This document shows positions 16,133 through 32,340 of a stretch of DNA of 64,000 nt, piece after piece. Both the position numbers and the translations under genes were made by a program. Each line of letters opens with the position of its first letter. Position 1 is the first letter of the stretch. The DNA lies in the IMG/VR virus record IMGVR_UViG_3300036766_000988, positions 124,001-188,000 of that record. One strand, 5' to 3'. The notes beneath the pieces are model-generated. The model saw nothing but the letters and a program-made list of their open reading frames with translations. It searched no databases and was not told where the DNA came from.

Positions 16133-16564
16133 TTACAGCACTCTGGACACAGAATGGACCCAGGTGGCGAACGCGTCTTCCGGGGTGATCTCATGGTACG
16201 TCCCGAAGTGGAAGTTCCACTTGTGGTGGTTTGCCGGGAATCCCACCGGGAACGGCCGTTGCGTCGGCTTGCCCCAGTCCTCTTGCTGCTGACGCAGGAT
16301 GTCTTCGAAACTCCCGAAAACGGTCATGTACCCATCGTTGGCGAGCAGCCCCTTCTCACCCTCCCGGTAGTGGATGGTGATGCCGTACGGACCGAACTTG
16401 GTGGGCAGCGTCCAGGTGTACCCGGAAGAAGGGATGTCCTTCACGTAGCCGTCGTTCTTCTTCCCACCGTGGGCCAGCACGAACTCACCGACGAGGGAGA
16501 ACAGCTTGCTGAGCGCAGCATCCGCCTTCTTCTGGGAGAAACGGGGCTTGGGTGAGGTCTTCAT
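16133..16564 (-). CDS. hypothetical protein
   Basis: Class A promoter motif 6 nt before the ATG. Confidence 0.6.
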   Translation of the reverse strand: MKTSPKPRFSQKKADAALSKLFSLVGEFVLAHGGKKNDGYVKDIPSSGYTWTLPTKFGPYGITIHYREGEKGLLANDGYMTVFGSFEDILRQQQEDWGKPTQRPFPVGFPANHHKWNFHFGTYHEITPEDAFATWVHSVSRVL

Positions 16565-16644
16565 GACGGTACTACGTCGGGTGAGGGGAAGCGTTCAACT
16601 TCAAACTGACTTGACTTCTTTGTAGACAACCTGGATGATAAAGG

Positions 16645-17589
16645 ATGCGCAAAGTCCTCTTACAAGGAATCTACCAGATTCGGAACACTACCAACGGGCA
16701 CTCCTACATCGGAAGCTCAGTCAACATTCACAGCCGATGGTCCGGGCACAAGTGCGACTTACGACGGGGCACCCACGACAACCCCATCGTGCAGGCGGCT
16801 TGGTTGAAGTATGGGGAAGACGCCTTCGAATGGCTCGTGCTTGAGACCGTAGAAAACAGGCTGAAGCTGCTTGAGCGTGAAGCTCAACACATGCTCGTTC
16901 TGAAACCCGAGTACAACCTGTCAAACCCCAACGAAGAGACCCTTAACATCGGACATCCCATGTCTGATGAGGCAAAGGCTCGAATCAGCAAGGCCAATAA
17001 GGGACGGAAGCGCACTGAAAAGACCCGCGACTTGATGAGTCGGCTCGCGAAGGTTCGAGGCATGCCTCAAGAAGCACAGGCACGTCAACGAGAGGCGGTG
17101 ACAGGAAGGCATCGTTCTCCCGAAGTGCGGGCGAAGATTGCTGCATCGCATCTCGGGATACGTCCTTCGGAAGAAACGAAGGCGAAGATCAGTCAAGCGT
17201 TGACGGGACAACCTGGTCGAAAGCACTCAGAAGAAGCTAAAGCTAAAATCGGTGCTGGTCGGAGGGGGAAGAAGCACACCCCAGAATCTCGGGCAAAGAT
17301 GTCAGAAGCACACAAAGGACATGAAGTCACCCCCATACATCGGGCCAACATGTCTGCTGGACAGAGGGGTCGAAAACACTCTGAAGAAACGAAAGCCAAA
17401 ATCGGAACTGGGCGAAAGGGAAAACGACACACGGCCGGGGCCAAAGCCAAGATCGCGGCTGCTCGACGTGCCCGATCTACCAGCGGTGTCGCTGCTGTTG
17501 CGCTCGTTGAGCAAGCAGAGTGTCTCGCTGCCAGGAATCCATCCATCCATCCGACGTCTTGTACTGGCCGAACCGACGATGCAGCTTGA
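16645..17589 (+). CDS. GIY-YIG homing endonuclease with NUMOD3 repeats
   Basis: GIYQIRNTTNGHSYIGSS...RW..H...KYGEDAFEWLVLE; repeated KHSEExKAKI / KHTPESRAKMS. Confidence 0.92.
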   Translation: MRKVLLQGIYQIRNTTNGHSYIGSSVNIHSRWSGHKCDLRRGTHDNPIVQAAWLKYGEDAFEWLVLETVENRLKLLEREAQHMLVLKPEYNLSNPNEETLNIGHPMSDEAKARISKANKGRKRTEKTRDLMSRLAKVRGMPQEAQARQREAVTGRHRSPEVRAKIAASHLGIRPSEETKAKISQALTGQPGRKHSEEAKAKIGAGRRGKKHTPESRAKMSEAHKGHEVTPIHRANMSAGQRGRKHSEETKAKIGTGRKGKRHTAGAKAKIAAARRARSTSGVAAVALVEQAECLAARNPSIHPTSCTGRTDDAA

Positions 17590-18088
17590 TCATCTCCGGT
17601 AAATTGTCGAGGGTAACGTACGGCCAGATGTCGTGGTAGATGGTCGAGAACTTGGTACCCTTCACCGGCTTCCACTCGAAGATGTCGGCTTCGACGACCT
17701 CGACCTTCTTGGGGAGGTAGGGTCCGACGAGCTTCACGACGTCGGGGCTCATCTCGACAACCGTCACCTTGGTGACCTCGGGCTTTGCCGCGATGGGGTG
17801 CAGGATCATCCCGAGGCCGAGTCCGGCGATCAGGACGTGACCGTGCGCCTGTCGGATGACCTGACGGTTGGTCCGCTGCTCCATCGGGGTGTCGCTCATC
17901 ATGAGGGTCCCGTTGACGAGCAGGTGCGCGTACACACCTGCCGGAACGTAGTCGTCCATGCGGCGGTGAATCGCGGCTCGGAGCTGCGTCATGTCGGCCG
18001 CCTGCGGGGTGACCTCGACGTGTCGGATCTCCACCTTGCCCGAGATACCCTCGGGGATGATCTTGGCGAGGCTGGGGAACTGGATCAC
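17477..18088 (-). CDS. class I SAM-dependent methyltransferase (spermidine-synthase-like)
   Basis: VLIAGLGLGMI, VTVVEMSPDVVKLV, EADIFEW, IYHDIWP. Confidence 0.8.
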   Translation of the reverse strand: MIQFPSLAKIIPEGISGKVEIRHVEVTPQAADMTQLRAAIHRRMDDYVPAGVYAHLLVNGTLMMSDTPMEQRTNRQVIRQAHGHVLIAGLGLGMILHPIAAKPEVTKVTVVEMSPDVVKLVGPYLPKKVEVVEADIFEWKPVKGTKFSTIYHDIWPYVTLDNLPEMIKLHRRFGQYKTSDGWMDSWQRDTLLAQRAQQQRHRW

Positions 18089-18600
18089 GACTCGTCTCCG
18101 AGGTCGGGGAGGATGCCGGGATTTCGGCGTTCGATGGCCCGGATGGCGGCGGTGATGTCCTTGACCGTCGTGGCAGCGGGAGTCTTGGGAAGCGCTTCGT
18201 AGTAGGCCTTCATCTTGTCGAGGATGTACTCGACTGCGAGATCGACCCTGCCGTAGTTGACGGTGTGCCGACCCTTGTAGGCCTTATCGTTGTAGTCCTT
18301 GAGGGTCGGCGGGTTCATGAAGTGACCCTTGTGGACCCAGCAGTCGATGAAGATGCCGTCGGTGTTTCGGTGCTCCCCAAACGTGATGAGGAGACAGGTC
18401 TTGTCCGAGAAGCTCCGACGGACGTTCAAGCAGACGCCGCGCTCCCGACCGTTGTACCAGGGGGACGTCTCGATCTCGATCTTGTACGTACCAAGATCCT
18501 TGTCGTACTCGGCGAAGGCGGGCTCCCGACGCGAGAGCATCGCCAAGACCGCCAAGGCCTGGGGGTTGAGGTTGAAGGTGGGGTCGCCGATGGTGTTCAT
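18085..18600 (-). CDS. hypothetical protein
   Basis: 171 aa ORF coupled to the methyltransferase. Confidence 0.6.
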   Translation of the reverse strand: MNTIGDPTFNLNPQALAVLAMLSRREPAFAEYDKDLGTYKIEIETSPWYNGRERGVCLNVRRSFSDKTCLLITFGEHRNTDGIFIDCWVHKGHFMNPPTLKDYNDKAYKGRHTVNYGRVDLAVEYILDKMKAYYEALPKTPAATTVKDITAAIRAIERRNPGILPDLGDES

Positions 18601-18607
18601 GGTTGTG

Positions 18608-18970
18608 CTACGCCGGGCAGGTCTCTTCGATCAACCGGCGAAGATCGTCCGGCCGCATCGGTTTCAGGAACACCTTGGTGGCCCCACAGGCGGTCCCGAT
18701 TCGGAAGACCTCCATGTTCCCCGAAATGAGCACCACGGGGATCTCGGGGTATCGAGCCCGCACGATCTCACAGAACTCGTCGCCGTCCATCCTGGGCATT
18801 TCGAGGTCCGACAGGATGAGGTCCGGCCTGAAGCCCCCTTCGAGAAGCGGTAACGCCTCCCCAGGGCACATGCACAGGGTGGAGTCGCAGTTCAGCATCG
18901 AGAGCATCCGGCCGTACGCGGAACGTATCTGCCGATCGTCTTCGACGACGAGAACCTTGGGAGCTGCCAT
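18608..18970 (-). CDS. stand-alone response regulator receiver (CheY-like)
   Basis: VLVVEDD, DLILSDLEMPRMDG (phospho-Asp), VVLISG, FLKP. Confidence 0.9.
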   Translation of the reverse strand: MAAPKVLVVEDDRQIRSAYGRMLSMLNCDSTLCMCPGEALPLLEGGFRPDLILSDLEMPRMDGDEFCEIVRARYPEIPVVLISGNMEVFRIGTACGATKVFLKPMRPDDLRRLIEETCPA

Positions 18971-18995
18971 GGGGGCCTTCTTGGGGGTGAGGGGT

Positions 18996-19493
18996 TCAGG
19001 CGGTGTGGCGGGCGAAGTCGAGCTTCTTCGAGGTGAGCGCCGCCGCAGCCAGCTCGGCCGCGTTGGGGGCACCAGCCGCCACAGCTTCGAGGACGGCTTC
19101 GAAGAGCTTGTCTTCGAGCCCGTGGGCGGCATCGAAGTCGCCAGCACAGGCCATGATCTCGGCGACCTTCTGGGTCACGTCCTTGACCGTCAGGCTGAGA
19201 TGGGCGGCGAGGTACCACTGGCCCTTGTCGAACTTGATGAGCCCGCCCTTGCGGAGGCTCTGAAGGGCGCGGTCGACGACGCGCTCGACGGGCAGCCCGT
19301 GATCGCCATCGACGAAGCGGGTCGTGAAGCCGCACACCACGACGAAGTGGCCCGACGTGCGACCCTGGGTCGGGTTCTTGAGGTACTCCAAGATCTTCGT
19401 CTTGGTGGTCTCGACCGCGAGCTTCTCGGTGCTGCCTTCGGGGGTCTTCATGGGGGTCTCCTGGGGGACGTGAAAGACGGGGAGAGCCCCCAT
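18996..19493 (-). CDS. hypothetical two-domain phage protein
   Basis: Class A promoter upstream; C-terminal GDFDAAHGLEDKLF..VL.A.A pattern. Confidence 0.55.
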   Translation of the reverse strand: MGALPVFHVPQETPMKTPEGSTEKLAVETTKTKILEYLKNPTQGRTSGHFVVVCGFTTRFVDGDHGLPVERVVDRALQSLRKGGLIKFDKGQWYLAAHLSLTVKDVTQKVAEIMACAGDFDAAHGLEDKLFEAVLEAVAAGAPNAAELAAAALTSKKLDFARHTA

Positions 19494-19534
19494 CTAGCAG
19501 TACTACGCCGTGGGGGCCCTTGGTTCAGCAGCTT

Positions 19535-19876: not shown

Positions 19877-19905
19877 GAGGCTACTACGCTCCTTGAAGAT
19901 TTGGT

Positions 19906-20187
19906 TCAACCCTGGATCGGATCCCGCGTGTAGGTCGCCAGGATCTCGCCCGTCCGCTGGTCCTTGATTCGAGCCGTCAGGATGTGGGTCAGCCCGATGT
20001 GGCTGTTGACGCCCCCTGGGGAGGTCGAGGCCTCGTACCCAAGAGCGTACTTCTTGAGGTTCTCGGTCGTGGCCTTGCCGTCAGCCGGGATCAGGCCCCG
20101 CTTGCGCATCCTCCACTCGGAGGGAGTCCAGTGCCCACGATCCGTGGTGACCTCGACGACGAACGGGATGAGTCGGCTGTGTCCCAT
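19906..20187 (-). CDS. hypothetical protein
   Basis: Class A promoter 6 nt before the ATG. Confidence 0.6.
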   Translation of the reverse strand: MGHSRLIPFVVEVTTDRGHWTPSEWRMRKRGLIPADGKATTENLKKYALGYEASTSPGGVNSHIGLTHILTARIKDQRTGEILATYTRDPIQG

Positions 20188-20217
20188 GAAGTTACTACGC
20201 CGTCGATCCCTTTGGGT

Positions 20218-20517
20218 TCAGCCGAGAAGATGCAGCACTTCTCGGACGTCGCTGTCGGTCAGCCCACAGGACTCTCCCTCCGCGTCCGCCTTGCAGACGA
20301 AGAAAGTACCCACGATGTGGGTATCGCCGACCACCCGGTTGAACGGCAGCCGTTGGAGGAGCCCTTCCTCGTTGCAGAAGAGGTCGAACCGGCCCAGCCG
20401 GACCAGCTCGATCAAGCCGCCCACGACCGCCTGCATCCCTTCCAAGGACGACGGAATCTCCTGGATCATGGGAAATCCGCCCGGCTTGCAGATGACGACC
20501 TGCATGGTTTTCGGCAT
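20218..20517 (-). CDS. DUF3846 domain protein
   Basis: LEGMQAVVGGLIE...LFCNEEG...LPFNR...IVGTFFV. Confidence 0.75.
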   Translation of the reverse strand: MPKTMQVVICKPGGFPMIQEIPSSLEGMQAVVGGLIELVRLGRFDLFCNEEGLLQRLPFNRVVGDTHIVGTFFVCKADAEGESCGLTDSDVREVLHLLG

Positions 20518-20528
20518 GAAAGTCTCCC

Positions 20529-20735
20529 TCAGATCTTTCGGATGCGGTCCGGCGGACAGACGACCATCAGGGTGCGGCCGTTGTCCCACAGGACATCGAT
20601 TTGGGTGAAGTTGTCGCCGGGCCCGAGCCGCACAGGTTCGACGTGACGAACCGTGCCCTTGGTACCCGGCGCAATCGGATTGGGGTCGTCGCTCATGCGG
20701 ATCATCTCGATCCGGTCACCGGTGGCGAACATCAC
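20529..20735 (-). CDS. DUF4314 domain protein
   Basis: GDRIEMIRMSDDPNPIAPGTKGTV...QIDVLWDNGRTL. Confidence 0.75.
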   Translation of the reverse strand: MMFATGDRIEMIRMSDDPNPIAPGTKGTVRHVEPVRLGPGDNFTQIDVLWDNGRTLMVVCPPDRIRKI

Positions 20736-20946
20736 TCCGCCCCCATGTAGGTGTAGGCGAAGAGCGCACGACGAACCTCTGCCACAGCCGCCTTCTCCTC
20801 GTTCGCACGAGCCACCTTGTCCGCCGCCGGAGCGGGGACAACGACGAACCGGATGACGACAGGGGTAACAGGGGTGAGGACCATCGAAACCATACAGCTA
20901 CTACACCTCGGGATCCCTTAGTTCAGCCAGGATTCGTTCTTGGGTG

Positions 20947-21246: not shown

Positions 21247-21275
21247 GCTGCTACTACGCCGCCAAGAGGCTGCGT

Positions 21276-21608
21276 TCAGCGAGCTTCGGGAATGTCGTTG
21301 AGGTCTGCCTCGAACCAGTAGCCGCCCGTCCCCGCCCAGCGAACGCTCGGGTTCGTCAGGGGCACCTTGGTGACGATGAAGTGGTACGGAGGCTCCGTCG
21401 CCTGCTCGTGTTTGGTATCCGTCGAACCAGGGAGGATGTGGTCGACTTTGACCCGGTAGGTACGAGCGGCGACGCGATCCTTCATCTGGGGATGCGTCGT
21501 TCGAAGGTGCGTACCCTTCGGGATCGTCACCGTGTCGCCTCGCTTGACGGGCAGATCCGCGTCCTCGTGGAAGCCGACGTACTTCGGGGTGTTAACAGAA
21601 GGGGCCAT
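21276..21608 (-). CDS. hypothetical SH3-like protein
   Basis: 110 aa ORF; TACTAG variant motif 6 nt upstream. Confidence 0.55.
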   Translation of the reverse strand: MAPSVNTPKYVGFHEDADLPVKRGDTVTIPKGTHLRTTHPQMKDRVAARTYRVKVDHILPGSTDTKHEQATEPPYHFIVTKVPLTNPSVRWAGTGGYWFEADLNDIPEAR

Positions 21609-22086
21609 GAAAGTACTAGGGTGTTGTATATACTTGTTGAACCAAAAAACGACTCCGGAGCGGCTATTTTTATTCAGGGTCTAGGCATCAAGGTAGGAAA
21701 TCTCACTTGATTTGAGCCGGGTTCTAGGACTTAGACCGAATAGGTCACCCCGTTAGTTCTGGGTTATTATGAAAAACGGTTCCGGAGCGGGGATTTGATC
21801 TTGTCCCTAAGTACGACCTACTGATGCGTGCCCAGCTCGACGCCAGCCAGGAAGGCCCAGATGAGCTGCCACAGAGCCAGATCGGTGACTTCCTGGAAGT
21901 TCCCAAGCCAGGCATCGGCGAATCCATCCCGGCGACGAACCTGAAGGTCGTACCCACGCCCTCTTTGGATGAGGGTAAACGTCCAGCCTTCGACGACGAA
22001 CTTGGAAGTGCCGCCTTCCTGGTACCGGACCCAGAAGTCGTGAACCTCCGCAGGAACTGTTTCAGGCGTCAGCGTGGTCCTGGGCA

Positions 22087-23140: not shown

Positions 23141-23169
23141 GGCGGTACTACGTTGCCAGAAGCCAGGGT

Positions 23170-23679
23170 TCAGCGAGCGTTCAACTCTTCTTGGGTAGGT
23201 GGTAGGAGATACGGACGAAGCTCGTGTTTGTCGTGTCGCTTGATCCATTGACAGTTCATACAGAGGGTCTGGAATCCTACTGGAAACCCTTGCCGCACAA
23301 GCCATCGGTAGAAGTTGATGCCCCCAAGGGTTCGGCGATGATCCGCACCACCGCTGTCTACGTGGTCGATGGAGAGCGCACGCATGTCAGGGAAACCACA
23401 CCCAACGCATATGACTCCATAGTGCGCAAAGACCCTCTCTTTGGCGCGGTAGTACGAGCTTCGACACGCAACGAGATGCCTGTCGTGGTACCGCTCGCGT
23501 TCGGTCGCGTAATGACCTGTTTTGGCTTTACGAGCCGCCTGGCGACGCTTGTTGTGGCATGTCTTACACTCGGTTTGAAGGCGGTCCCTAGTGGTCCGGT
23601 GGGGATGAAACTCGCTTACAGCGATTGGGCCCCGTTCTGGACCACACATAGCGCATCGTTTCAGTCGTTCTTCACTCAT
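23170..23679 (-). CDS. HNH endonuclease with N-terminal Zn finger
   Basis: CAMC...ECKTC; YGVICVGCGF...LSIDHV...QTLCMNCQWIK. Confidence 0.78.
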   Translation of the reverse strand: MSEERLKRCAMCGPERGPIAVSEFHPHRTTRDRLQTECKTCHNKRRQAARKAKTGHYATERERYHDRHLVACRSSYYRAKERVFAHYGVICVGCGFPDMRALSIDHVDSGGADHRRTLGGINFYRWLVRQGFPVGFQTLCMNCQWIKRHDKHELRPYLLPPTQEELNAR

Positions 23680-24174: not shown

Positions 24175-24592
24175 GTAGCTACTACGCCCGTGCCAGCCTC
24201 AGTTCAGCAAGTTTTCGGACAGCGCCCCAGAGCTGTTCCCAGCGAATCTGTGATGTGCTACCCCCAACTTGGGCGAGTAGCTCAGAACCGATTCAGAAGC
24301 GCCGCGTCCAGGAAGCGCAGACGAATTGGGTCACGAGCAGCGGGCTGATAACCCGTCAGGACGCTGGTAGTCGTGACCAGCCTCGTCCTTTTGAACTAGG
24401 GAACAACCCGATGAGGAGCCTCGTCGGGACAATCCCGATCCCAGAGCTTCACGTACTCACGAGCTTCCTTGCGAGTTGCACCGGCTTCGAACTTCTTGCC
24501 CGTGTTGTCCCGCACGTACCACCAGGGCTTCTTGGGGGTCTTGGTCGGCTTCTTGGGCTTCATCCAGCTACTACGCTGGCAGGAGTCCCAGC

Positions 24593-25306
24593 TCAGTCTG
24601 AAGTCCACCAAGCCGAACGAGCGGCCAATTTGACCTTGATCCGGTCGGCCTGCTCCTGGCCTTCCTGCCAGCGCGTCGGGTTGTTCTTCCGCTGGCTGTC
24701 ACAACCAGCCCAGGTCTCGGCAGCGCCCGCACAGGCGGCCTCGAAGGGCATCCCGCTCTTGAGACTGCGGAGGAAGTCCAGAGCCGAAGCCACGCAACCT
24801 CCGGCTCCTGGCACAGCGGTCGCCCCAAGAGCAGCGGCCCAGTTGGACTCCGTGATCGCAAACGCGTCCTCGAAGGTGCGGTAGGTCTCGACGATGCAGT
24901 ACGCGATCGTCACTGGATGGCCGGGGTAGACCGCGAACTCGCCGAGGATGTCCAGGTCGTGCCGGGTATCCTCCCCAGGGTAACGGGGCAGCCTCATGCG
25001 GATGTTGCGAGGAAGCTTCCCCGCCACATCGTAGGTGTCCATGGTGCCCGTGCGGTCGTAGCAGTACCAGCCGTGCAGCTCCGAAGAGTACTCGCTGTCG
25101 TGCTGCCGCCCGTAGAGCTTCGTCAGGCTGTTCGCCGTGTTGATGGCGTCCGCTCGGTTGAGCCAGAGCCGCAGGACGTAGTTTCCCCGAGTCACCCGCA
25201 CTTCCTGGGGCGGTCCCTTGGGAATATCCCGCACCGGCACACGCTTCTTGGCTGCCTTCTTGGGGGTCTTGGCTGCCTTCTTGGATGCGGGGCTCCCGGT
25301 CTTCAT
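24593..25306 (-). CDS. hypothetical protein with Lys-rich N-terminus
   Basis: Class A promoter 7 nt before the ATG; 237 aa. Confidence 0.6.
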   Translation of the reverse strand: MKTGSPASKKAAKTPKKAAKKRVPVRDIPKGPPQEVRVTRGNYVLRLWLNRADAINTANSLTKLYGRQHDSEYSSELHGWYCYDRTGTMDTYDVAGKLPRNIRMRLPRYPGEDTRHDLDILGEFAVYPGHPVTIAYCIVETYRTFEDAFAITESNWAAALGATAVPGAGGCVASALDFLRSLKSGMPFEAACAGAAETWAGCDSQRKNNPTRWQEGQEQADRIKVKLAARSAWWTSD

Positions 25307-25341
25307 GGTGGGTACTACACCTCAGAGGCCCCTGGTTCAGC

Positions 25342-25818: not shown

Positions 25819-25820
25819 GG

Positions 25821-28800
25821 TTACTCGGCGAGGATCCTGTCCCAAGCAGTTCTGGGCGGAGCTTTGTAGACGTAGATGAGCAGCACCCGCTGGTTGATCT
25901 CCTTGCCCAAAAGATTGTGGCGGATCCAACAGCTCTTCTTGTTGACCTTCGTGACTACGCCGAAACGCCGTCGTCCGTAGGCGTACGGGTAGAACGAAAC
26001 CCGCACCCCCACAGCGAGCCAGAGCAAGTCCATGGCTCAGTCGTGCGTTCCGATGTGCATGGTGCCGTGCTCGGGACAGGTGAACGAGTACATGCAGACG
26101 CAGGGAGAAGGCGTCGCCTTCGAGCAACAGGCGTGCTGCCGGATGTGTTCTTTGCGGCGGCACTCGTCCGAGCAGAGCTGCTGCTCGAAGCGCTTCACCG
26201 CCCACCGGAAAACCTCGTCCGCCACGGGTTGGCCGCAGCAGCGGCACGTGCCGTACTCCTGCATCGCCCTGACAAGCCAGAAGAAGCTCCTGTTCTCCGC
26301 CCGATACTCACCCCTGAACAGGTACTGGTAGGTGGCCAGGTCCGAACGGAGCTTCTTCACGTCGCCTTCGAGCATGCTGAGAAGAAGCAGCACCCGCTCG
26401 TGCATCTCCCCCTTCTTGATCTGCACGGTGACGCGCTTCGGCTTGCTGGAACGCTTCTTGGGAGTGGGCTTCTTGGGGGTCATGGTCTTCCTAGACATTA
26501 CACCTCTACTCCTCGTGTCAGCCGTTACCAGCTTGAGACGGCCCAGTTGAGCAGCGCACGGAGCTTCTCGGGAGCCACCAACACACGGTCACCGCCGTAG
26601 ACCTGAATCGCAAGATGAAGCCCCGACCTGGGAGCATTCACCGTGGTCCGGTACACGAACACTGTCGGGGACTCGCCCAGGAGGTCGTAGGTGGCGTCCG
26701 GCTTCTCCCACCAGAGAAGTAGGCGCTCCACGAGCGCCACGGGTAGCCTGACGTGGTGATGATCGACAGCGATGTGCAGCACCTTCTCGTCCGTCCCCCA
26801 CTCGATGGAGGCCGACTCGCCGGTCTCGAAACAGCAGGCCGAGCCCAAAGGCTGCTGGATCTCGGGGGTCCCCACCGGCTTCGGAGCCGTGTACCCACCC
26901 AAAATCGTGTGGTTGAGGTCGTTCATGACAGTACTACGCCTCCAAAAGTAGGAGTTCAGCTAGGGAACGCCGCCGCCCGCTCCAAGAGCTGGAGAGCTTC
27001 CTCGCATTCGGCCGCCTTCGCCAGCAAAAGCTGGTCAACCTTGCTGCCGACCCCACGAGGAGCCGCTTCGCGGTAGATCTTGGCGTAGCTGCGGAGTAGG
27101 TCCAACGCAGCGTTGGGGCGAACGACGGGGGCAGCAACGGGCTTGGTGTCCATGAGGGTACTACGCCGCCACTTCTTGGGATTCAGCCCGACTTCTTGCG
27201 CTCCCCAGGGAAGTGCCAGCTATCGAGGAGCTTCTGAGGCACCGGCTGGTCGCCAAACATCCGAAGGATCTCGGCCCTGGCCCGGTGACACCGAGCCTCC
27301 TCCCGGTAATACGCCTGACGCTCCCAGTCGGAGAAGATGGCAGCCGCTTCGGCACAGGTCTTGGGTAGGGACGGAGTGCCCATCAGGTGGCCTCTTGAGG
27401 GTTGGGGAGGTTGCTCACGATGTGCGAGACCAACCAGTCGGCCGCGTCGTACATCCCGAGCCGGGACGCCACGAGCCGCAAATCCTCCAACTGGTCGTTC
27501 AGCGAATCCTGACGTTGCGATTGCCGAGGCAGAGCGCGGACAAGAGCGAGAAAGTCTTCGCGGGCCATTTACGCCGCCTTCCTGAGCGCATGGTAGCGCT
27601 GCTGGATCTGGCCGTTCCGGTGCGTCATGCGGGGACTCACCGACCCCAACATGTCGAGCAGGTCTTCACGGGGCCAGCTCCGTAGCTCGGGGAACTCGGC
27701 AAGTAGACGATCGAGGGCGGTGTCCATGAAACTACTACGCCGCCTGGAAGCCCGGTTCAGCGGGCCTTCGCGAGCTTGACGAAGAGCTTGAGCGCCTCGT
27801 CGAACGGAAGGGTGTTGAGAACCACCATCTGGGGATCGAACGGGACAGAGTGTCCGGGCAGGTTCGCCTGGAAAAGCTTTCCGTCACGAACGAAGACGAG
27901 CTTCTTCTTGAAGAGCCTCTTGAGGTCGCGCTCCGCCAGCCAGGTGTCCAGAAGCTCACCGAAAAGAAGCTCGGGGGACTGGGGGAGCGGCCCGAAGGCG
28001 TGATCGACCGGAGGCAGCGTCTTGCAGTAGACCCTGATCTCGTCGGCAAGACTTCCAGGACGAATCAGGTCCGCCCCACCGTGACCGTCGTTCTCGACCG
28101 TCCCGCGCTTCACCCCATCAACCCAGACATCCGCTGCAAAAGCAGACGTCTCGTGGGAAAGTCGCGCGTTGTAGGAGATGCGACGAAGTTCGATCTTCAT
28201 AGGGGTACTACGTCTTGGGTACTGCCGGTTCAGCCAAAATGTTGACCAGTAACGTAGGGTCGCCCGCCTGGGTCCGATGATGCCTGTACTCCCCCGCAGC
28301 CACGGAACGCGTCGAGCCAGACTCCTGCCACCCACAACAGCAGATGGCCGTCCAGCAACGTTCCGCAAGCGACCGCTCGCCGTTTGATTCCAGCGACACC
28401 AACCGGTGCTTCACGCGATGGCCTGAGCCCAGAGGTCGAGCTTGAGTACCAGATCCAAGGTCGCCTGCTCGAACGTGTCCCCCGAGCCCGTGATGTTCGA
28501 CGCTTTGCAGCGGCTCCCACGAAGCTTCACCGGAATACTCATTGTGCAGCCCCAGGCGGCTCACCCGGAACTCGGGCTCACCCAACGGGCCAGGCACCGG
28601 CAGAAGCCGAGGATGAAGACGTACGGCTTCCTCGATCTTGAGGAACAGCGGTTCCAGTTCAGCAGCGGTGGCCATGCAGCTACTACGTCACCATGACCCA
28701 CAGTTCAGCTCGTCCAGCAAGGGTGGAATCCCTACCGCCGGGCGGACAACCAGATGAGGCCGACCGCCAGAAGCCCCACCAGCAAGAGCCCGAAGTCGAC

Positions 28801-29407
28801 CGCGTCCCAGATGCCCATTCTGGGCCCTACACCGAAGGGGAGAAGTACCTGGAAGCCCGGAGCTGCTTGGCGGCTTCCTCGACCGTGTACCGCACCATGA
28901 GGGTCTGCTCCCGCCTGGCTTGCCGCTTCCGCTCCTGTCGATTCAGCTCAAGCTTCACGAGACGCTGAGTCCAATACCCGATCCGGGCAAGATAGCGATC
29001 CCCCAGCCACCGACGATTCGCCCGAGCTGCTTCTTGGCTCAGCCGCTGCTGCTTTCGCTCTCGTCGGGTCTGCTTCACGTCTTGTCTTCCTGAGCGTCCC
29101 CTGGCAGGTCTTCGAGCGGCGTGCGGGTCCCGTCCTCGGCTTCGTACTCGGGCCTGGTGAGCTTCGAGCCCGGCCCAAAACACTTGCTCACGTCGGGATG
29201 ATGCACGATGCGGGTCAGCGGCTTCGCCGTCCTATCGTGATCGACCCGAGCGTACCCCGCCTTCTTCTCGGCCTCGTACTCGGACAACAGCTTCAGGGGG
29301 ACGCCCGGCCAATCACGGCGAAAGCATTCCTCACATCGGGCGCTCTCCCCCATGTGCGAATAGCCCCCGTTCGGCAGCTCCGTCCCGCAGTCTGCACAGT
29401 CTTCCAT
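25821..29407 (-). other. run of small hypothetical genes (25821..26033, 26037..26498, 26525..26926, 26956..27153, 27183..27383, 27383..27568, 27757..28200, 28208..28675, 29075..29407)
   Basis: Contiguous minus-strand ORFs, most preceded by class A or B motifs; no function recognised. Confidence 0.6.
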
Positions 29408-29429
29408 ACGGTACCCCTCCAGTACACCG

Positions 29430-29448
29430 ACTTTCGTTGCACGAAAGT
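29430..29448. promoter_or_regulatory. palindromic operator ACTTTCGT-TGC-ACGAAAGT
   Basis: Perfect 8 bp inverted repeat upstream of an RHH gene; related site at 31141..31169. Confidence 0.6.
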
Positions 29449-29471
29449 AACATCCGTTGTACGAATGTAAC

Positions 29472-29777
29472 GTGGCCCTGGGACGACCTCGCCGAAACCC
29501 CTCCCAAGCAGCTACCGAGTTCGTTGCTTTCCGGCTGACCAAGGACGAGCTGCGGGCCCTCGATGGCTTCGTGGAGCTGAAGAACCAGGAGCTTGCCGCT
29601 TTGGGTAGCTCGATGACCCGAGCTTCGTTCCTGCGAGCCCTGGTGACCCGCAACATCCAGCCCCAGCCGAAGCCAGCCAAACGAAAGCCCGCCCCCGCCC
29701 CAGAGCCGGAGCCCGAGCCCGAAGAAGAAGCTCCCGAACCCGACACCAGCGACATCTTCGAGAACTCACCGCTCTAA
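29472..29777 (+). CDS. ribbon-helix-helix DNA-binding regulator
   Basis: FVAFRLTKDELRALD...MTRASFLRALV; lone plus-strand gene in a minus-strand block; GTG start inferred. Confidence 0.6.
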   Translation: MALGRPRRNPSQAATEFVAFRLTKDELRALDGFVELKNQELAALGSSMTRASFLRALVTRNIQPQPKPAKRKPAPAPEPEPEPEEEAPEPDTSDIFENSPL

Positions 29778-30375
29778 ATGGCTTCGACCCCGGCCTGCTC
29801 TCCTCACCGAGGATAGAAGCAGGACAGGGTCGAGGAAGAGCGGAAAGAAACTGGCCCCTCAGAGCTACTACGCAGGGGCCCGCGGGAGTTCAACCGCTAG
29901 CGAGCAACCCACATGTGTGCGTCGCGATCGTAGGTGGCGAGCCCGTGAAGGACCCGAACCACACGGCGTTCCGACGCCTGGAAGCGCTCGGCGGCAGCCC
30001 AGAGGACGCGAGCCCTGGGGGCAGCGGCGGTGAAGTTGGCCGCACAAAGACGACGTGCCGCCAGGTCACGACGAAGAGCCGAGTGGAGCAGCATGTTCCG
30101 ACGGGCGTTGAGAGTCTTGATCGTGGACATGAAAGGGTCTCCTGGGCCTACTACGCCTCTCATTCAACAAGGTCAGCCCCAAAAAACCTGGGCCGAAACC
30201 CCGACAAGACTACCCGACGAAGTTCGGGTCAATCCCATCGAAGCCTCGGCCCGCTCCCAAGGGAGCCGCCTCGGCAGCACAACCGGCCTCCCAATGAATG
30301 AAAGAGGCAGTTGCGAGGGGCTAGCTGTTCGCCCCTTACCGGAAAAGGTAGCCGGGTCCGCCAGAATCTTGAGCC

Positions 30376-30693
30376 TTAGTAGGCGCCGAGCTTGTCCCAC
30401 CAGACGCGGGGCTGCTTGCGGGACTTGCGGGGAGCGCGGATGGCCACCGGGGGCGGCGAGGTGCCCTGAACCGCCAGCACCTTGCCGGACAGCACGGTCT
30501 GCTGACGGAACGCTTCGAGGTGCTTGCACGAGCGGTTCATCGGATGGTTCTTCTGGAACCGCCAGCTTGGACACGTGCAGTAGATGTTGCCGTCCTTGCC
30601 CAGACGAACCTCGTGAACGTGCAGCGGGTTCGACTTCGAGGCGAAGGTGGCGAGGAGCGTGGGGCGAAAGACTGGAGTCGTCGTCTTGTCCAT
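30376..30693 (-). CDS. SWIM zinc-finger protein
   Basis: HEVRLGKDGNIYCTCPSW...CKHL; class A promoter. Confidence 0.75.
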   Translation of the reverse strand: MDKTTTPVFRPTLLATFASKSNPLHVHEVRLGKDGNIYCTCPSWRFQKNHPMNRSCKHLEAFRQQTVLSGKVLAVQGTSPPPVAIRAPRKSRKQPRVWWDKLGAY

Positions 30694-30891
30694 ACACCTA
30701 CTAGGTCGCTTGACCCCCGCGTTCAGCAGAAAATCGTAACTTTCATCTTAGTCCGTGCGGTCACGGTGTACTGCGGGCCGCCCATGGCCCAAAAGGAAAA
30801 CGCCAGGAAGTACCCGACCACACCTGTGCCCGCAGGATGCGATCCGGTCTTCCTGGCGAAGTTGTTCGAGCCCAGGCCCGTGAGCAGGCGA

Positions 30892-31089
30892 TTACTCGAC
30901 CTCGCTCTGCATGTCCGCCAGAGCCGCCTTGAGGCGAGCCGGGACGTCCTTGCCCGCGGTGGACATGAGAAGGGCGGTCATGGTGATGCCCTCGATCTTG
31001 GCGAGCAGCCGCACCTGACGGGCGAGCTTCTCGGGAAGCGAGATCGAGAGGATGGTGACCTTGGAAGGGGAGCCGGTAGAGGTGTCCAT
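30892..31089 (-). CDS. ribbon-helix-helix (CopG-like) regulator
   Basis: ILSISLPEKLARQVRLLAKIEGITMTALL; class A promoter 6 nt before the ATG. Confidence 0.65.
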   Translation of the reverse strand: MDTSTGSPSKVTILSISLPEKLARQVRLLAKIEGITMTALLMSTAGKDVPARLKAALADMQSEVE

Positions 31090-31316
31090 GGCCCTACTAG
31101 GGCTCTGAACCCGAAGGTTCAGCCTCAAATCGACCCTGTTACTTTCGTGACATTACGTTGCACGAAAGTCGCTAAACTCCGGGCCCCGTTGGCACGGCGA
31201 TTTCCCAACGTTTTGGCACATGGGCCGAACCATTATGACGCACGGCCCATTCGGGCGCAGAGCCCTTAGCCCTCTAATTCCTGGGGGGTCCGGAGGCCGC
31301 ATAAGACTTTCGTCGG

Positions 31317-31955
31317 TCACTCCGAGGCAGCCCGTAGCTTCGCTCGCCGGGCGTAGATCTTCTGCCAACCGGGAGGCAGAGCTGCCCAAGCCTGACGCTC
31401 TTCGGATTCTGCCTGAGCCTGGGACTGCTTCTGAACCCGTAGTCGGTTTTGAGCGGCGACCAGCTTGGCCCTAGTCTCTTCCGAGACTACCCGTCCCATG
31501 CTGGCAGCTTCGCGTCGCTTTCGACCTTCTTCGGATAACCTGAACCTCTGTCGCGGTCTCGACAGCTTCGCTCGGGTTTCAGCGGACGGTCGGAGTCCCT
31601 GGTGAGCCTTCGACATCTTGGCTCGGGCTTCTGGGGTGAGCTTCCAACCGGCCATGGCCGACCATCCCCCTGGGCTCATGTTGAACCCGAGAGCAGGGTC
31701 AGTAGAGCCGAAGTGGGCAACCCACCACAGCTCGGCCTCGTTGGCTTCCTCCAACGTCTCGACCCTCTCTAGGACTTCGGCGGTGAAAGTCTCTGGACCG
31801 AACTCTCGGATCGCCTAGTGGAAGCGTCCTCGACTCCCTCGCTTGAGAGCATCCCCCTTATGCCGAGTCCACCGCTTCTTGGTTGTCTTGGAGGTCTGAC
31901 CAACGTAGCGACGCTGGCTAGCCTGGTGGACGTGGCAGTAGATCTCGAACGGCAT
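31317..31955 (-). pseudogene. GIY-YIG/NUMOD3 endonuclease interrupted by one in-frame TAG
   Basis: FEIYCHVH..RRYVGQT..RW..H..GRFH*AIREFGPETFTAEVLE...GFNM..GG; TAG at 31815..31817, same frame on both sides. Confidence 0.8.
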
Positions 31956-31975
31956 CCCCCGTTCTACACCGCTCC

Positions 31976-32305
31976 CTAGTAGCCGAAGTCGTACGCCACG
32001 ATCCGGCCTGCACGGGTCAGCCCTACTTGCTGGCAGTCGACGTAGTCCGCCCACCTGGGTTGCGCCTCGTCAGGAACGCTGGTGTCGACCCGCTCCATGA
32101 CGAGCCAGCCGTTCTTCAACAACCTGCACCTAGCGTACAGGACCCCGTTCTGGTCCGGCCCACGACCCCACCGCCTTGAGAGCCGGGCTTCGCGGCTGTT
32201 GTCCGCCAGGCCGTAGTCATTGAGCGGCACCTTGATGACCCACCGGCCGTCTGCGTAACAGGCTCGGCTGTAACCACTGCCCAACAAGGTTCCCCTGGGT
32301 TCCAT
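31976..32305 (-). CDS. minimal protein-kinase-like protein, paralog 1
   Basis: GSGYSR Gly loop, VIK, alphaC Glu, LVME hinge, terminal VAYDFGY. Confidence 0.55.
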   Translation of the reverse strand: MEPRGTLLGSGYSRACYADGRWVIKVPLNDYGLADNSREARLSRRWGRGPDQNGVLYARCRLLKNGWLVMERVDTSVPDEAQPRWADYVDCQQVGLTRAGRIVAYDFGY

Positions 32306-32340
32306 CCTGGGACTACTGCGCGAACTTGGGAAGTTCAACC

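What the first reader, a model, noticed from the sequence alone, without database searches (positions are those of the whole stretch)
16564..32340. One-gene-one-promoter array: ~20 ECF-type promoters fixed 6 nt before ATG (leaderless mRNAs)
Seen: on the minus strand (G/A)(C/T)TGAAC-N15/16-CGTAGTA recurs, and the last A lies exactly 6 nt before the ATG in most cases (16570>16564, 19882>19876, 20193>20187, 20899>20893, 21252>21246, 23146>23140, 24180>24174, 26932>26926, 27159>27153, 27733>27727, 28206>28200, 28681>28675, 30699>30693, 31095>31089). These genes lack Shine-Dalgarno sequences. Established: -35 GAAC/TGAAAC with -10 CGTA is the ECF-sigma promoter type (B. subtilis SigW-like), and a start site about 6 nt after -10 means transcription begins at the ATG. 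Inference: the accessory region is built from interchangeable promoter+gene cassettes read by one ECF sigma (host stress sigma or phage-encoded). Leaderless translation could bypass host initiation control, and the repeated promoters could serve as recombination points for cassette shuffling.
Basis: partly seen in the sequence, partly recalled or inferred. Interest (0 to 1): 0.75.

Follow-up and report, generated by a model that had tools for sequence, protein, structure and literature searches.

The report
Huge-phage private-sigma promoters making leaderless mRNAs
An uncultivated giant phage carries about 50 copies of one ECF-type promoter, most of them butted directly against an ATG so that the mRNA should start at the start codon, and the phage encodes its own very divergent sigma factor that most likely reads them.

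Summary
The window lies in a 252-kb IMG/VR phage record (about 53% complete, 61% GC, about 54 tRNAs plus a tmRNA). The motif GCTGAAC-N14-RCGTAGTA occurs 13 times exactly in the window (0 expected). It occurs about 50 times at 20 bits or more in the whole record, always co-oriented with a downstream ORF. In 28 sites an ATG follows after exactly 5 nt, and in 7 after 6-7 nt. The 13 sites with a 12-40 nt leader nearly all carry a Shine-Dalgarno core.

A divergent sigma-like gene (window 11002-11874, minus strand) sits behind a perfect copy of the motif. Its sigma-2 fold is supported by structure comparison.

Relatives with a 57-62% identical sigma keep the same motif. A clade with a 26-28% identical sigma keeps CGTAGTA but has a different -35. 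A 485-kb huge phage without this sigma lacks the motif.

Start sites could not be mapped because no RNA run was listed. Leaderless starts also occur at sigma-70-like promoters here, so "bypassing host control" is unsupported. I class it as a new variant of a known kind.

The parts
11002..11874 (-). Gene for sigma-like protein S1 (290 aa). It has a sigma-2 domain split by an insertion of about 100 aa, plus a C-terminal four-helix HTH-like domain.
   Evidence: Pfam Sigma70_r2 positions 1-37 of 71, 18.8 bits. TIGR02937 18.5 bits, below the cut-off. AF2 model with VIA-align: about 45 of the top 50 PDB hits are sigma-2 domains, Z up to 7.8. Nine homologs share the invariant HF.N.CRT..R.
11904..11932 (-). 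Class-A promoter of the sigma gene (29.6 bits), followed by a 29-nt leader with GAGAGGA. Putative autoregulatory promoter.
   Evidence: Conserved in L005, L007, L008, L025 and L026.
11979..12007 (-). Conserved upstream element TTGACA-N17-GTACGA. Candidate host-type promoter P1 that could supply the first sigma.
   Evidence: Both blocks are invariant and the spacer variable in 4 phages. Also present in L025, L026 and L027. Inference only.
16570..16599 (-). Class-A promoter (15-nt spacer), then N5-ATG. Leaderless ORF 16133-16564 (143 aa).
18606..18635 (-). Class-A promoter variant (GTTGATC / GCGTAGCA, 19 bits), then N5-ATG. ORF 18085-18600 (171 aa), followed by SD-led 17477-18088 (203 aa, methyltransferase-like).
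19501..19529 (-). Class-A promoter, then N7-ATG. ORF 18996-19493 (165 aa).
19882..19910 (-). Class-A promoter, then N5-ATG. ORF 19535-19876 (113 aa). The TGA of the -35 block is the stop codon of the upstream gene.
   Evidence: The homolog in L005 (2012-2332) has the same promoter, and the proteins align from residue 1.
20193..20222 (-). Class-A promoter (15-nt spacer), then N5-ATG. ORF 19906-20187 (93 aa).
20899..20927 (-). Class-A promoter (GTGTAGTA), then N5-ATG. ORF 20732-20893 (53 aa), followed by SD-led ORFs 20529-20696 and 20218-20517.
   Evidence: The homolog L005 1487-1645 has the same promoter.
21252..21280 (-). Class-A promoter, then N5-ATG. ORF 20947-21246 (99 aa).
21614..21642 (-). 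Weak variant (GTTCAAC / CCCTAGTA, 14.5 bits), then N5-ATG. ORF 21276-21608 (110 aa).
23146..23174 (-). Class-A promoter, then N5-ATG. ORF 22733-23140 (135 aa), followed by SD-led 22087-22467 (126 aa).
24180..24208 (-). Class-A promoter, then N5-ATG. ORF 23725-24174 (149 aa).
24569..24597 (-). Class-A variant (ACTGAGC, 20.5 bits), then N5-ATG. ORF 24396-24563 (55 aa).
25313..25341 (-). Class-A promoter (GTGTAGTA), then N6-ATG. ORF 24593-25306 (237 aa).
26932..26960 (-). Class-A promoter, then N5-ATG. ORF 26525-26926 (133 aa), followed by SD-led 26037-26498 (153 aa).
27159..27187 (-). Class-A variant (GCTGAAT), then N5-ATG. ORF 26956-27153 (65 aa).
27733..27761 (-). Class-A promoter, then N5-ATG. 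ORF 27569-27727 (52 aa), followed by SD-led 27383-27568 and 27183-27383.
28206..28234 (-). Class-A promoter, then N5-ATG. ORF 27757-28200 (147 aa).
28681..28709 (-). Class-A promoter, then N5-ATG. ORF 28208-28675 (155 aa). The coding score is weak (-4.2), so the gene is uncertain.
29866..29894 (-). Class-A promoter (28.2 bits) with no start codon within 40 nt. It may drive a long leader or a non-coding RNA; the next minus-strand ORFs start at 29755 or 29407.
   Evidence: No Rfam family matched.
30149..30177 (-). Class-A variant (GCTGACC) with an 18-nt leader containing AGGAG. ORF 29897-30130 (77 aa).
30699..30727 (-). Class-A variant (ACCTAGTA), then N5-ATG. ORF 30376-30693 (105 aa).
31095..31123 (-). 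Class-A variant (CCCTAGTA), then N5-ATG. ORF 30892-31089 (65 aa).
16611..17589 (+). Not part of the array. A GIY-YIG/NUMOD3 homing-endonuclease gene (16645-17589) inserted in it, with its own sigma-70-like leaderless promoter TTGACT-N17-GATGAT-N5-ATG.
61119..61757 (-). Second sigma-related protein S2 (212 aa). It consists of two sigma-4-like HTH domains and has no sigma-2. Its role is unknown; it could be a -35-binding partner or a regulator.
   Evidence: Pfam Sigma70_r4 E 3.9e-14, two stretches. TIGR02937 43.0 bits through region 4 only. PDB SigF region 4.

Best explanation
The repeats are promoters of one class, GCTGAAC(-34..-28)-N14-RCGTAGTA(-13..-6). They are most likely read by host core RNA polymerase carrying a phage-encoded, highly divergent ECF-like sigma factor, S1 (window 11002-11874, minus strand).

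Proposed sequence of events:
1. S1 is probably made first from a conserved upstream host-type element (TTGACA-N17-GTACGA).
2. S1 then amplifies itself from its own class-A promoter.
3. S1 switches on about 50 transcription units of small, mostly orphan genes, plus RNA/DNA repair enzymes (RtcB, an ATP-dependent ligase, LigA, a phosphatase).

In about 35 units the -10 element ends 5-7 nt before an ATG. [quoted passage not shown] This gives leaderless mRNAs, which are translated from a 5'-terminal AUG without Shine-Dalgarno pairing.

There are no terminators between units, and the internal ATGs have no SD. Each such gene would therefore be translated mainly from the transcript started at its own promoter. 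Follower genes in the same unit use SD.

Shown: the motif, its statistics, its geometry, its conservation, the sigma-2 fold of S1, and the co-occurrence and co-variation of motif and sigma.
For: Motif statistics and fixed spacing:
-.
- The logo shows invariant T-32 G-31 A-30 and T-10 A-9 G-8, a variable spacer of fixed length (14 nt in 53 of the 60 sites used to build the final weight matrix), and C at -1 and A at +1.

Start codons are real:
- The ORFs from these ATGs have positive coding scores.
- Homologous proteins in the relative L005 align from residue 1 and carry the same promoter.

Complementarity with SD:
- 11-12 of the 13 sites with 12-40 nt leaders contain an SD core. Sites 5-7 nt from the ATG cannot.
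- SD cores precede 31% of other gene starts, against a 14% background.
- Sigma-70 consensus promoters and terminators in the array are at chance level.

S1 is a sigma:
- Partial Sigma70_r2 and TIGR02937 hits.
- A region 2.3/2.4-like block is invariant in 9 homologs.
- About 45 of the top 50 PDB structural matches are sigma-2 domains, Z 5-7.8, rmsd 2.6-3.5 A.
- ESM Atlas feature neighbours are Sigma70_ECF clusters.
- JGI names a homolog 'sigma24 family'.

Link between S1 and the motif:
- A perfect motif lies upstream of S1 in G000 and in six related contigs.
- The clade with 26-28% identical sigma keeps CGTAGTA but has GGACTTCAT as its -35. The motif again lies upstream of the sigma gene there, and once 6 nt before an ATG.
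- A 485-kb huge phage, the best hit of this phage's DNA polymerase A, has neither the sigma nor the motif.

Geometry agrees with published work:
- ECF promoters have AAC in the -35, CGT in the -10 and spacers of 14-17 nt, and autoregulatory copies are typical (PMC5758882).
- In C. glutamicum, cGTT lies at about -13 to -10 (PMC10012870).
- The phage phiEco32 gp36 promoter has G at -11 (PMC12276001).
- In Deinococcus, leaderless genes have the -10 element 6-7 bp before the ORF (PMC12340547).
Against: - No transcript data: no RNA run was listed, so neither promoter activity nor the start site is measured.
- S1 fails every curated sequence threshold (Pfam 18.8 against 24; TIGR02937 18.5 against 42.9).
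- Foldseek alone was not significant, and VIA Z below 8 is in the grey zone for helical domains.
- The C-terminal domain could not be shown to be sigma-4.
- If the -10 is aligned as in Mtb sigma-L, with CG at '-14/-13' (PMC6372665), the discriminator would be only 4 nt for a start at the A. This is shorter than usual.
- The co-variation rests on two clades and a few sites.
- The host is unknown, so a host ECF sigma of the same specificity cannot be excluded.
Confidence: 0.68

Rival explanations
1. The motif is a promoter, but it is read by a host ECF sigma factor (a stress sigma of the unknown host). S1 would then be an unrelated regulator, or would read only its own gene.
For: The motif matches the generic ECF pattern (AAC / CGT) used by many bacterial ECF groups (PMC5758882). 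S1 is below all curated sigma thresholds. A gene behind its own promoter needs some other factor to start expression.
Against: The motif tracks the phage sigma. It is the same in phages with 57-62% identical S1. The -35 is changed where the S1 C-terminal domain has diverged. The motif is absent from a related huge phage that lacks S1. A conserved TTGACA-type element upstream of the sigma promoter offers a bootstrap route. Putting about 50 units under a host stress sigma would make the phage dependent on the host's stress state.
Confidence: 0.15
2. A two-part sigma: S1 supplies sigma-2 (reading the -10 CGTAGTA) and the separate protein S2 (two sigma-4-like HTH domains, window 61119-61757) supplies -35 recognition and flap binding. 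This would resemble the two-subunit sigma factors and T4 gp55/gp33 (comparison from my own knowledge, not tested here).
For: The sigma-4 identity of the S1 C-terminus is unproven. S2 has clear sigma-4 homology, at or above the curated thresholds, and no sigma-2.
Against: S1 has its own conserved C-terminal long helix plus three-helix bundle, the size and topology expected of sigma-4. The -35 change in the distant clade goes with the divergence of that domain. S2 lies 50 kb away, in an operon with a KOW-5'-3' exonuclease protein, and has no class-A promoter. Whether S2 occurs in the relatives is unknown.
Confidence: 0.1
3. The repeat is not a promoter. It would be a start-associated regulatory element acting on DNA or RNA, such as an operator for a repressor or a translation signal, like the SAS/ESAS of Cluster K mycobacteriophages or the stoperators of Cluster A.
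For: As with SAS, the repeat lies a few nucleotides before ATG codons of non-structural genes, in one orientation, and sometimes overlaps the stop codon of the upstream gene (PMC3203893).
Against: The element is bipartite, with two invariant blocks and a sequence-free spacer of fixed length, which is the signature of sigma-4 and sigma-2 contacts. It contains no SD core, whereas SAS does. When it lies 12-40 nt from the start, a separate SD appears, as expected if it marks the 5' end of the mRNA. No other promoters are detectable in the array. It precedes the sigma gene in every relative.
Confidence: 0.05

Closest known systems
ECF (group 4) sigma regulons with autoregulated sigma genes, e.g. 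B. subtilis sigma-W (TGAAAC-N16-CGTA) and C. glutamicum sigma-H/E (GGAAC-N17-18-cGTT)
   Same: A -35 with an AAC core and a -10 with a CGT(A) core. Close adherence to consensus. A fixed spacer within the 14-17 nt range. A copy upstream of the sigma gene itself (PMC5758882, PMC10012870).
   Different: The sigma is phage-encoded. It is 290 aa long, with an insertion of about 100 aa inside sigma-2. It is below the curated family thresholds, and no recognisable anti-sigma lies next to it. The -10 block is longer (RCGTAGTA). Two thirds of the promoters abut the start codon.
Phage-encoded alternative sigma factors, e.g. phiEco32 gp36 with its middle/late promoters
   Same: A distant sigma homolog encoded by a phage redirects host core polymerase to a conserved phage promoter class. 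G at -11 lies within a GTA triplet. A C-terminal domain contacts the -35 region (PMC12276001). The gp36 open complex 9m7y_F was the top Foldseek row for S1, though not significant.
   Different: There is no detectable sequence relation: tblastn of S1 against 50,697 phage records found nothing. The promoter has a strong ECF-type -35. No gp79-like partner was identified. The transcripts here are leaderless.
Leaderless gene expression from a -10 element placed 6-7 bp before the ORF (Deinococcus-Thermus; Thermus phage phiYS40 middle/late genes)
   Same: The -10 hexamer is followed by 5-7 nt and then the start codon, with no SD and a strong ATG preference. This is phage use of leaderless mRNAs on a large scale (PMC12340547; PMC3594737, summarising Sevostyanova et al. 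2007).
   Different: Those promoters are read by the housekeeping sigma and mostly lack a -35. Here the main class has an ECF-type -35 and -10 and a private sigma. This phage also has a smaller housekeeping-like class, GTGTANNNT-N5/6-ATG.
Start-associated sequences (SAS/ESAS) of Cluster K mycobacteriophages
   Same: A short conserved repeat 3-7 bp upstream of ATG codons of non-structural genes, in one orientation, conserved across subclusters in front of unrelated genes (PMC3203893).
   Different: SAS is a single 13-bp block containing AGGAG, lying in the RBS position, and is proposed to act in translation. The present element is bipartite, has no SD core and looks like a promoter.

Membership tests
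ECF-type (group 4 sigma) promoter | -35 element with a conserved AAC core | tested here: met
   G-34 C-33 T-32 G-31 A-30 A-29 C-28. T, G and A are invariant in 47 of 47 aligned sites.
ECF-type (group 4 sigma) promoter | -10 element with a CGT core (CGTA in the sigma-W type) | tested here: met
   C-12 G-11 T-10 A-9 G-8 T-7 A-6. T, A and G are invariant, C is present in 41 of 47 sites and G in 44 of 47.
ECF-type (group 4 sigma) promoter | Fixed spacer within the 14-17 bp range | tested here: met
   Of the 60 sites used to build the final weight matrix, 53 have 14 nt between GCTGAAC and RCGTAGTA (15 nt between GAAC and CGTA), 5 have 15, and one each has 13 and 16. The range is as given in PMC5758882.
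ECF-type (group 4 sigma) promoter | A copy upstream of the cognate sigma gene (autoregulation) | tested here: met
   A perfect site lies at window 11904-11932 before S1. The same is seen in L005, L007, L008, L025 and L026, and with the variant -35 in L027 and L022. This is sequence evidence only.
ECF-type (group 4 sigma) promoter | Transcription depends on the ECF sigma | not testable with these tools
   No RNA runs were listed. It needs in vitro transcription or reporter assays.
ECF sigma factor (TIGR02937 / Pfam Sigma70_r2 + Sigma70_r4_2) | Score above the curated family cut-offs | tested here: not met
   Sigma70_r2 18.8 bits against 24, covering only profile positions 1-37 of 71. TIGR02937 18.5 against 42.9; the homolog P0010 scores 25.6.
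ECF sigma factor (TIGR02937 / Pfam Sigma70_r2 + Sigma70_r4_2) | Sigma-2 domain fold | tested here: met
   The AF2 model (pLDDT 73) aligns to the sigma-2 domains of sigma-28, sigma-B, sigma-E, sigma-H, sigma-S and sigma-70 with Z 5-7.8 and rmsd 2.6-3.5 A over 73-84 residues. About 45 of the top 50 rows are sigma factors. Caveat: Z below 8 is in the grey zone, and Foldseek E-values were 0.6-5.
ECF sigma factor (TIGR02937 / Pfam Sigma70_r2 + Sigma70_r4_2) | Sigma-4 domain (HTH that binds the -35 and the beta-flap) | tested here: inconclusive
   The C-terminal 80 aa model well (pLDDT 84.5) as a long helix plus three short helices. There is no Pfam r4 hit. The PDB profile search gave only weak LuxR/RcsB hits, E about 1. 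Foldseek gave nothing significant.
ECF sigma factor (TIGR02937 / Pfam Sigma70_r2 + Sigma70_r4_2) | Only sigma-2 and sigma-4, no regions 1.1 or 3 | tested here: inconclusive
   No region 3 or 1.1 hit. However, an insertion of about 100 aa (residues about 55-155, with a weak MerR-like wHTH match, Z 5.2) lies inside sigma-2, which is atypical.
ECF sigma factor (TIGR02937 / Pfam Sigma70_r2 + Sigma70_r4_2) | Co-transcribed cognate anti-sigma factor | tested here: inconclusive
   In the relatives a conserved 271-277 aa protein follows the sigma gene. It matches no Pfam or PHROG family. In G000 its homolog lies 40 kb away.
Leaderless mRNA genes | Transcription start coincides with (or lies within a few nt of) the start codon | not testable with these tools
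   No RNA run was listed for this sequence. The start is inferred from the -10 position and from C-1/A+1.
Leaderless mRNA genes | -10 element about 6-7 bp upstream of the ORF and no SD | tested here: met
   The hexamer CGTAGT ends 6 bp before the ATG in 28 sites, and 7-8 bp before it in 7. This compares with PMC12340547. Only 5-7 nt separate the motif from the ATG.
Leaderless mRNA genes | Strong preference for AUG as the 5'-terminal start codon | tested here: met
   All 35 close-coupled sites use ATG.
Start-associated sequences (Cluster K mycobacteriophages) | Single 13-bp block containing the AGGAG SD core in the RBS position | tested here: not met
   The element is bipartite and has no SD core. 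SAS is defined in PMC3203893.

The most novel reading that the evidence does not exclude
The phage runs a private expression channel. An insertion-bearing sigma, found so far only in this group of uncultivated huge phages, is coupled to obligatorily leaderless mRNAs. A set of about 35 small host-takeover genes would then be both transcribed and translated by rules that differ from those of most host genes. This could let them be expressed while SD-dependent initiation or host sigma activity is being shut down. The identical promoter blocks would also delimit cassettes that are exchanged between related phages.
Probability: 0.15. Interest if true: 0.8.

Novelty: new variant of a known kind. Interest (0 to 1): 0.6.

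Why it matters
Transcription programmes of uncultivated huge phages are almost unknown. Published surveys list their tRNAs, ribosomal proteins and initiation factors, but not their promoters (PMC7162821).

This case gives a complete and testable regulatory circuit read from sequence alone. It comprises a sigma gene with a probable bootstrap promoter and an autoregulatory promoter, about 50 target promoters with a sharply defined consensus, and a built-in prediction of the mRNA 5' ends.

It shows that ECF-type promoter geometry can be fused directly to start codons on a large scale. It also provides an orthogonal sigma/promoter pair, with a natural -35 specificity variant, that could be tested as a synthetic-biology part.

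Finally, it corrects gene starts. Gene callers that expect an SD will mis-start such genes, as seen for one gene in L027.

Tried and rejected
- RNA evidence: two run searches. Only one DNA run (a sediment metagenome) holds the sequence, and no RNA run was listed.
- Close relatives in phage collections: megablast of 17 kb against INPHARED found nothing. tblastn of S1 found nothing. S1 in IMG/VR found nothing. The full motif with N5-ATG in IMG/VR gave 0 hits. The clade-2 motif in IMG/VR gave 91 single, chance-like hits.
- Host identification: scans of GTDB genomes with the S1 profile and with LigA found nothing. ESM Atlas neighbours of the ClpX-like protein were spread over many phyla. The ENA contig behind L005 is not searchable as a handle.
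The T7 search had no positive control, and the record is incomplete.
- Translation factors that might favour leaderless mRNA (IF3, S21, S1): none in the 252 kb held.
- 'The stop codon of the upstream gene is the TGA of the -35 block': true for about 15 of 55 sites. That is no more than the one-in-three expected for any in-frame TGA, so I treat it as a sign of compact packing, not a signal.
- Recombination at promoters: nucleotide identity to the relative is too low (68-79%) to place breakpoints.
- A sigma-54 reading of the conserved GGCACGGC-N-TTTTG upstream of the sigma promoter: rejected, because the GG-N10-GC spacing is not met (by inspection).
- Simple k-mer enrichment in intergenic DNA found no further strong motif. 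The second promoter class appeared only when -10-like hexamers were anchored to start codons.

Full report
**Context.** The window is bases 124,001-188,000 of a linear 252,183-bp IMG/VR virus record that CheckV rates about 53% complete. GC content is about 61%. The record carries about 54 tRNA genes, a tmRNA and a CTA-anticodon suppressor tRNA. It also encodes family-A DNA polymerase, RecD2, an SNF2 helicase, NAD-ligase and other replication genes. Its polymerase is most similar (34% identity) to that of an unannotated 485-kb 'uncultivated phage' record, LR745208.1. It has no nucleotide match among 50,697 phage records. The only sequencing run found to hold it is a sediment metagenome. This is therefore a fragment of an uncultivated huge phage with an unknown host.

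**Observation.**
- TGAAC-N15/16-CGTAGTA gives 13 exact hits in the window, all on the minus strand, against 0.00 expected. CGTAGTA alone gives 22 against 1.3 expected.
- A two-block weight matrix (GCTGAAC, 12-17 nt, RCGTAGTA), built iteratively on the whole record, finds 62 sites at 14 bits or more against 3.7 in Markov-shuffled genomes.
- Fifty sites reach 20 bits. Of these, 28 have an ATG after exactly 5 nt, 7 after 6-7 nt, 13 have a start codon 12-40 nt downstream, and 2 have no obvious gene.
- Anchoring the search on the other end gives the same picture. Of the 33 genome-wide occurrences of TAGNA-N5-ATG, 29 carry the -35 block at the right distance. The -35 block, the -10 block and the ATG therefore form one unit.
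- With the A of the ATG numbered +1, the logo reads g-35 G C T G A A C-28, then 13 unconstrained positions, then G-14 R-13 C G T A G T A-6 S-5, N3, C-1 A+1 T G. There is also a weak A-rich patch at -41 to -39.
The range 16564-32340 holds 21 sites (plus the weak site at 21614).

**Two corrections to the observation.**
- About 33 minus-strand genes lie in that range. Units are therefore 1-3 genes long, and the followers carry SD-like cores.
- The motif is not special to this region. A second array lies on the plus strand at genome 95.5-119.4 kb. Isolated copies precede RtcB, an ATP-dependent ligase, NAD-ligase and a phosphatase.
- Of 46 first genes behind the motif, only those few match a family with an assigned function.

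**Are the ATGs real starts, and is the mRNA leaderless?**
- The ORFs opened by these ATGs are 50-470 codons long and almost all have positive coding scores.
- Two of them have homologs in a related contig (L005) that align from residue 1 and carry the same promoter at the same distance.
- Where the motif lies 12-40 nt from the start codon, 11-12 of 13 leaders contain an SD core (AGGAG, GAGG, GAGAGGA). Where it lies 5-7 nt away, there is no room for one.
- SD cores also precede 31% of other gene starts, against a 14% background. The phage therefore does use SD when a leader exists.
- This complementarity is what is expected if the motif marks the 5' end of the transcript.
- The array has no sigma-70 consensus promoters (2 against 2.0 expected) and no excess of terminators (14 against 13.2).
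- If the element is a promoter, the start must lie between the -10 block and the ATG. The leader is therefore at most about 5 nt. The conserved pyrimidine-purine step C-1/A+1 favours the A of the ATG itself.
- Published geometry fits. In C. glutamicum sigma-H/E promoters the C of GGAAC is at -31 and cGTT follows after 17-18 nt, at about -13 to -10 (PMC10012870). The phiEco32 gp36 promoter has G at -11 (PMC12276001). Deinococcus leaderless genes have the -10 element 6-7 bp before the ORF (PMC12340547).
- Aligning instead as in Mtb sigma-L, with CG at '-14/-13' (PMC6372665), would leave a 4-nt discriminator. The exact start is therefore uncertain by about 2 nt.
- No RNA run was listed for this sequence, so the start sites are inferred and not measured.

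**Who reads the promoters?**
- A search of the record for sigma domains found a weak Sigma70_r2 hit in an ORF at window 11002-11874. A perfect copy of the motif lies directly upstream of it.
- This protein, S1 (290 aa), matches only the first half of Sigma70_r2 (18.8 bits) and of TIGR02937 (18.5 bits). Both scores are below the cut-offs.
- Nine homologs share an invariant block, F..YL....HF.N.CRT..R, at residues 160-185. I read this block as region 2.3/2.4. If so, sigma-2 is interrupted by an insertion of about 100 aa.
- An AlphaFold model (pLDDT 73) gave no significant Foldseek match. In the VIA-align second look, however, about 45 of the 50 best chains are sigma factors aligned over their sigma-2 domain (Z 5-7.8, rmsd 2.6-3.5 A, model residues about 5-185).
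- ESM Atlas feature neighbours are Sigma70_ECF and Sigma70_r2 clusters. JGI names one homolog 'sigma24 family'.
- The C-terminal 80 residues fold confidently (pLDDT 84.5) into a long helix plus a three-helix bundle. They could not be shown to be sigma-4.
- A second protein, S2 (window 61119-61757), consists of two clear sigma-4-like domains and nothing else. Its role is open.
- No phage RNA polymerase was detected.

**Comparative evidence linking S1 to the motif.**
- Homologs of S1 at 57-62% identity lie on metagenome contigs, one of them 227 kb long.
- Every one of these contigs has GCTGA(A/C/T)C-N14-GCGTAGTA followed by a conserved SD leader in front of the sigma gene.
- The 19 kb available from the 227-kb contig holds seven strong sites, five of them with N5-ATG.
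- In a more distant clade (S1 26-28% identical; contigs L027 and L022) the -10 block CGTAGTA is kept, but the -35 is GGACTTCAT at 16-17 nt. It again lies in front of the sigma gene, and once 6 nt before an in-frame ATG.
- In that clade the sigma-2 invariants are retained, while the C-terminal domain is only 22% identical. The -10 therefore stays with the conserved sigma-2, and the -35 changes with the diverged C-terminal domain.
- The 485-kb phage LR745208.1 has neither S1 nor the motif: one hit, equal to the reversed-pattern control.
- This is a small sample, but it is the pattern expected of a cognate sigma/promoter pair, and not of a host sigma.

**Bootstrap.** Upstream of the sigma promoter, four phages share TTGACA-N17-GTACGA, with invariant blocks and a variable spacer. 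L025, L026 and L027 have close variants. I take this as a candidate host-type promoter that makes the first S1. After that the class-A promoter would give positive feedback, as in many ECF systems (PMC5758882). This step is inference.

**Leaderless starts are general in this phage.**
- Anchoring TANNNT hexamers to start codons revealed a second class, (C/T)CG-GTGTA(G/C)NNT-N5/6-ATG/GTG, without a -35. Thirteen of 43 GTGTANNNT sites have a start codon at 5-6 nt, against about 3 expected. These precede a ClpX-like ATPase, an acyl carrier protein, a nucleotidase and DUF1848.
- Canonical TTGACT-N17-TACTCT-N6-ATG precedes the endonuclease VII gene. TTGACT-N17-GATGAT-N5-ATG precedes a GIY-YIG/NUMOD3 homing endonuclease inserted on the opposite strand within the array.
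- The host translation system is thus probably at ease with leaderless mRNA. No IF3, S1 or S21 gene was found in the part of the genome held.

**Cassettes.** The relative L005 is collinear with window 20893-11008. It then continues at genome 95.5 kb and downwards. In the present phage, therefore, a block of about 40 kb separates the sigma gene from its usual neighbours, a 273-aa protein and an N6/N4 methyltransferase. Within the array, conserved promoter-gene units alternate with non-homologous units at the same slots. DNA identity is too low to see whether exchanges happened at the promoters.

**Comparison with known systems.** The element works like an ECF-type promoter and meets the sequence-level criteria for one. 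S1 has a sigma-2 fold but fails the curated sequence thresholds, and its sigma-4 is unproven. I therefore call it ECF-like, not a member of a named ECF group. The nearest functional parallels are:
- phage-encoded sigmas such as phiEco32 gp36 (PMC12276001);
- leaderless phage transcripts such as those of Thermus phage phiYS40 (summarised in PMC3594737);
- cellular leaderless promoters of Deinococcus-Thermus (PMC12340547).

The Cluster K 'start-associated sequences' (PMC3203893) look similar on a map, but they are a single block containing an SD core.

My literature searches found no paper that combines a phage-encoded sigma with leaderless promoters. The huge-phage survey does not mention leaderless mRNA. 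These searches are limited to open-access text.

**Verdict.** The promoter and leaderless reading is well supported by sequence and comparative evidence but unmeasured. The claims about evading host control and about recombination are not supported. I class it as a new variant of a known kind. Interest 0.6.

Noticed in passing
window 3456(-), 35618(-), 45358(+), 46561(+); elsewhere in G000 at 33031, 56229, 57535, 220384, 234146, 238020, 238456: A second class of leaderless promoter-like sites, (C/T)CG-GTGTA(G/C)NNT followed after 5-6 nt by ATG/GTG, with no -35 block. They lie in front of host-like genes (ClpX-like ATPase, acyl carrier protein, NT5C nucleotidase, DUF1848). Thirteen of 43 GTGTANNNT sites have a start codon at that distance, against about 3 expected.
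   Followed up: partly
window 16611-17589 (+): A GIY-YIG/NUMOD3 homing-endonuclease gene sits on the opposite strand inside the promoter array. It has its own TTGACT-N17-GATGAT-N5-ATG leaderless promoter and looks like a mobile insertion.
   Followed up: partly
window 11940-12010 (-), and the same place in L005, L007, L008, L025, L026, L027: The region upstream of the sigma gene is more conserved than the coding DNA. It contains TTGACA-N17-GTACGA and then AAAAGC..GGCACGGC.TTTTG.GTACGGGGGCG before the class-A promoter. The second block is unexplained; it is not a sigma-54 site by spacing.
   Followed up: partly
window 29400-29894 (-): A strong class-A promoter (28.2 bits) has no start codon within 40 nt. 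It may drive a long leader or a non-coding RNA. No Rfam family matches anywhere in the window.
   Followed up: no
window 61119-63766 (-): An operon encoding a 668-aa protein that joins a KOW (NusG-like) motif to a 5'-3' exonuclease (PIN plus SAM fold), followed by a 212-aa protein made of two sigma-4-like HTH domains. This is an unusual pairing of transcription-factor-like parts.
   Followed up: partly
G000 62.8-88.5 kb (L012, L013) and G000 36908-36981 (L010 16908-16981): About 54 tRNA genes and a tmRNA (tag ANDNSTALPALLAA) lie in one minus-strand block. A separate tRNA with anticodon CTA is a possible amber suppressor. Whether TAG is recoded in part of the genome was not examined.
   Followed up: no
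G000 95.5-135 kb versus L005 9100-9125: In five related contigs (L005, L008, L025, L027 and the P0007 contig) the sigma gene is followed directly by a conserved 256-277 aa protein of unknown family (candidate partner or anti-sigma); an N6/N4 methyltransferase gene follows further downstream in four of them, while L025 ends too soon to tell. In this phage about 40 kb, including the plus-strand promoter array, lies between them.
   Followed up: partly
S1 protein residues about 55-155 (window about 11410-11710, minus strand): The insertion inside sigma-2 models as a small alpha/beta domain with a weak structural match to the MerR-family winged-helix DNA-binding domain (5d90, Z 5.2). Its function is unknown.
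   Followed up: no
window 43386-43440, both strands: A divergent pair of TTGAC(T/A)-N18-(C)ATTAG-N5/6-ATG sites lies back to back. This looks like two leaderless genes sharing one short control region.
   Followed up: no
LR745208.1 285080-289930 (L024 20001-24851): The best DNA polymerase A relative, in the 485-kb uncultivated phage, matches in 4 separate pieces. The gene may be interrupted there by an intein, an intron or a homing element.
   Followed up: no
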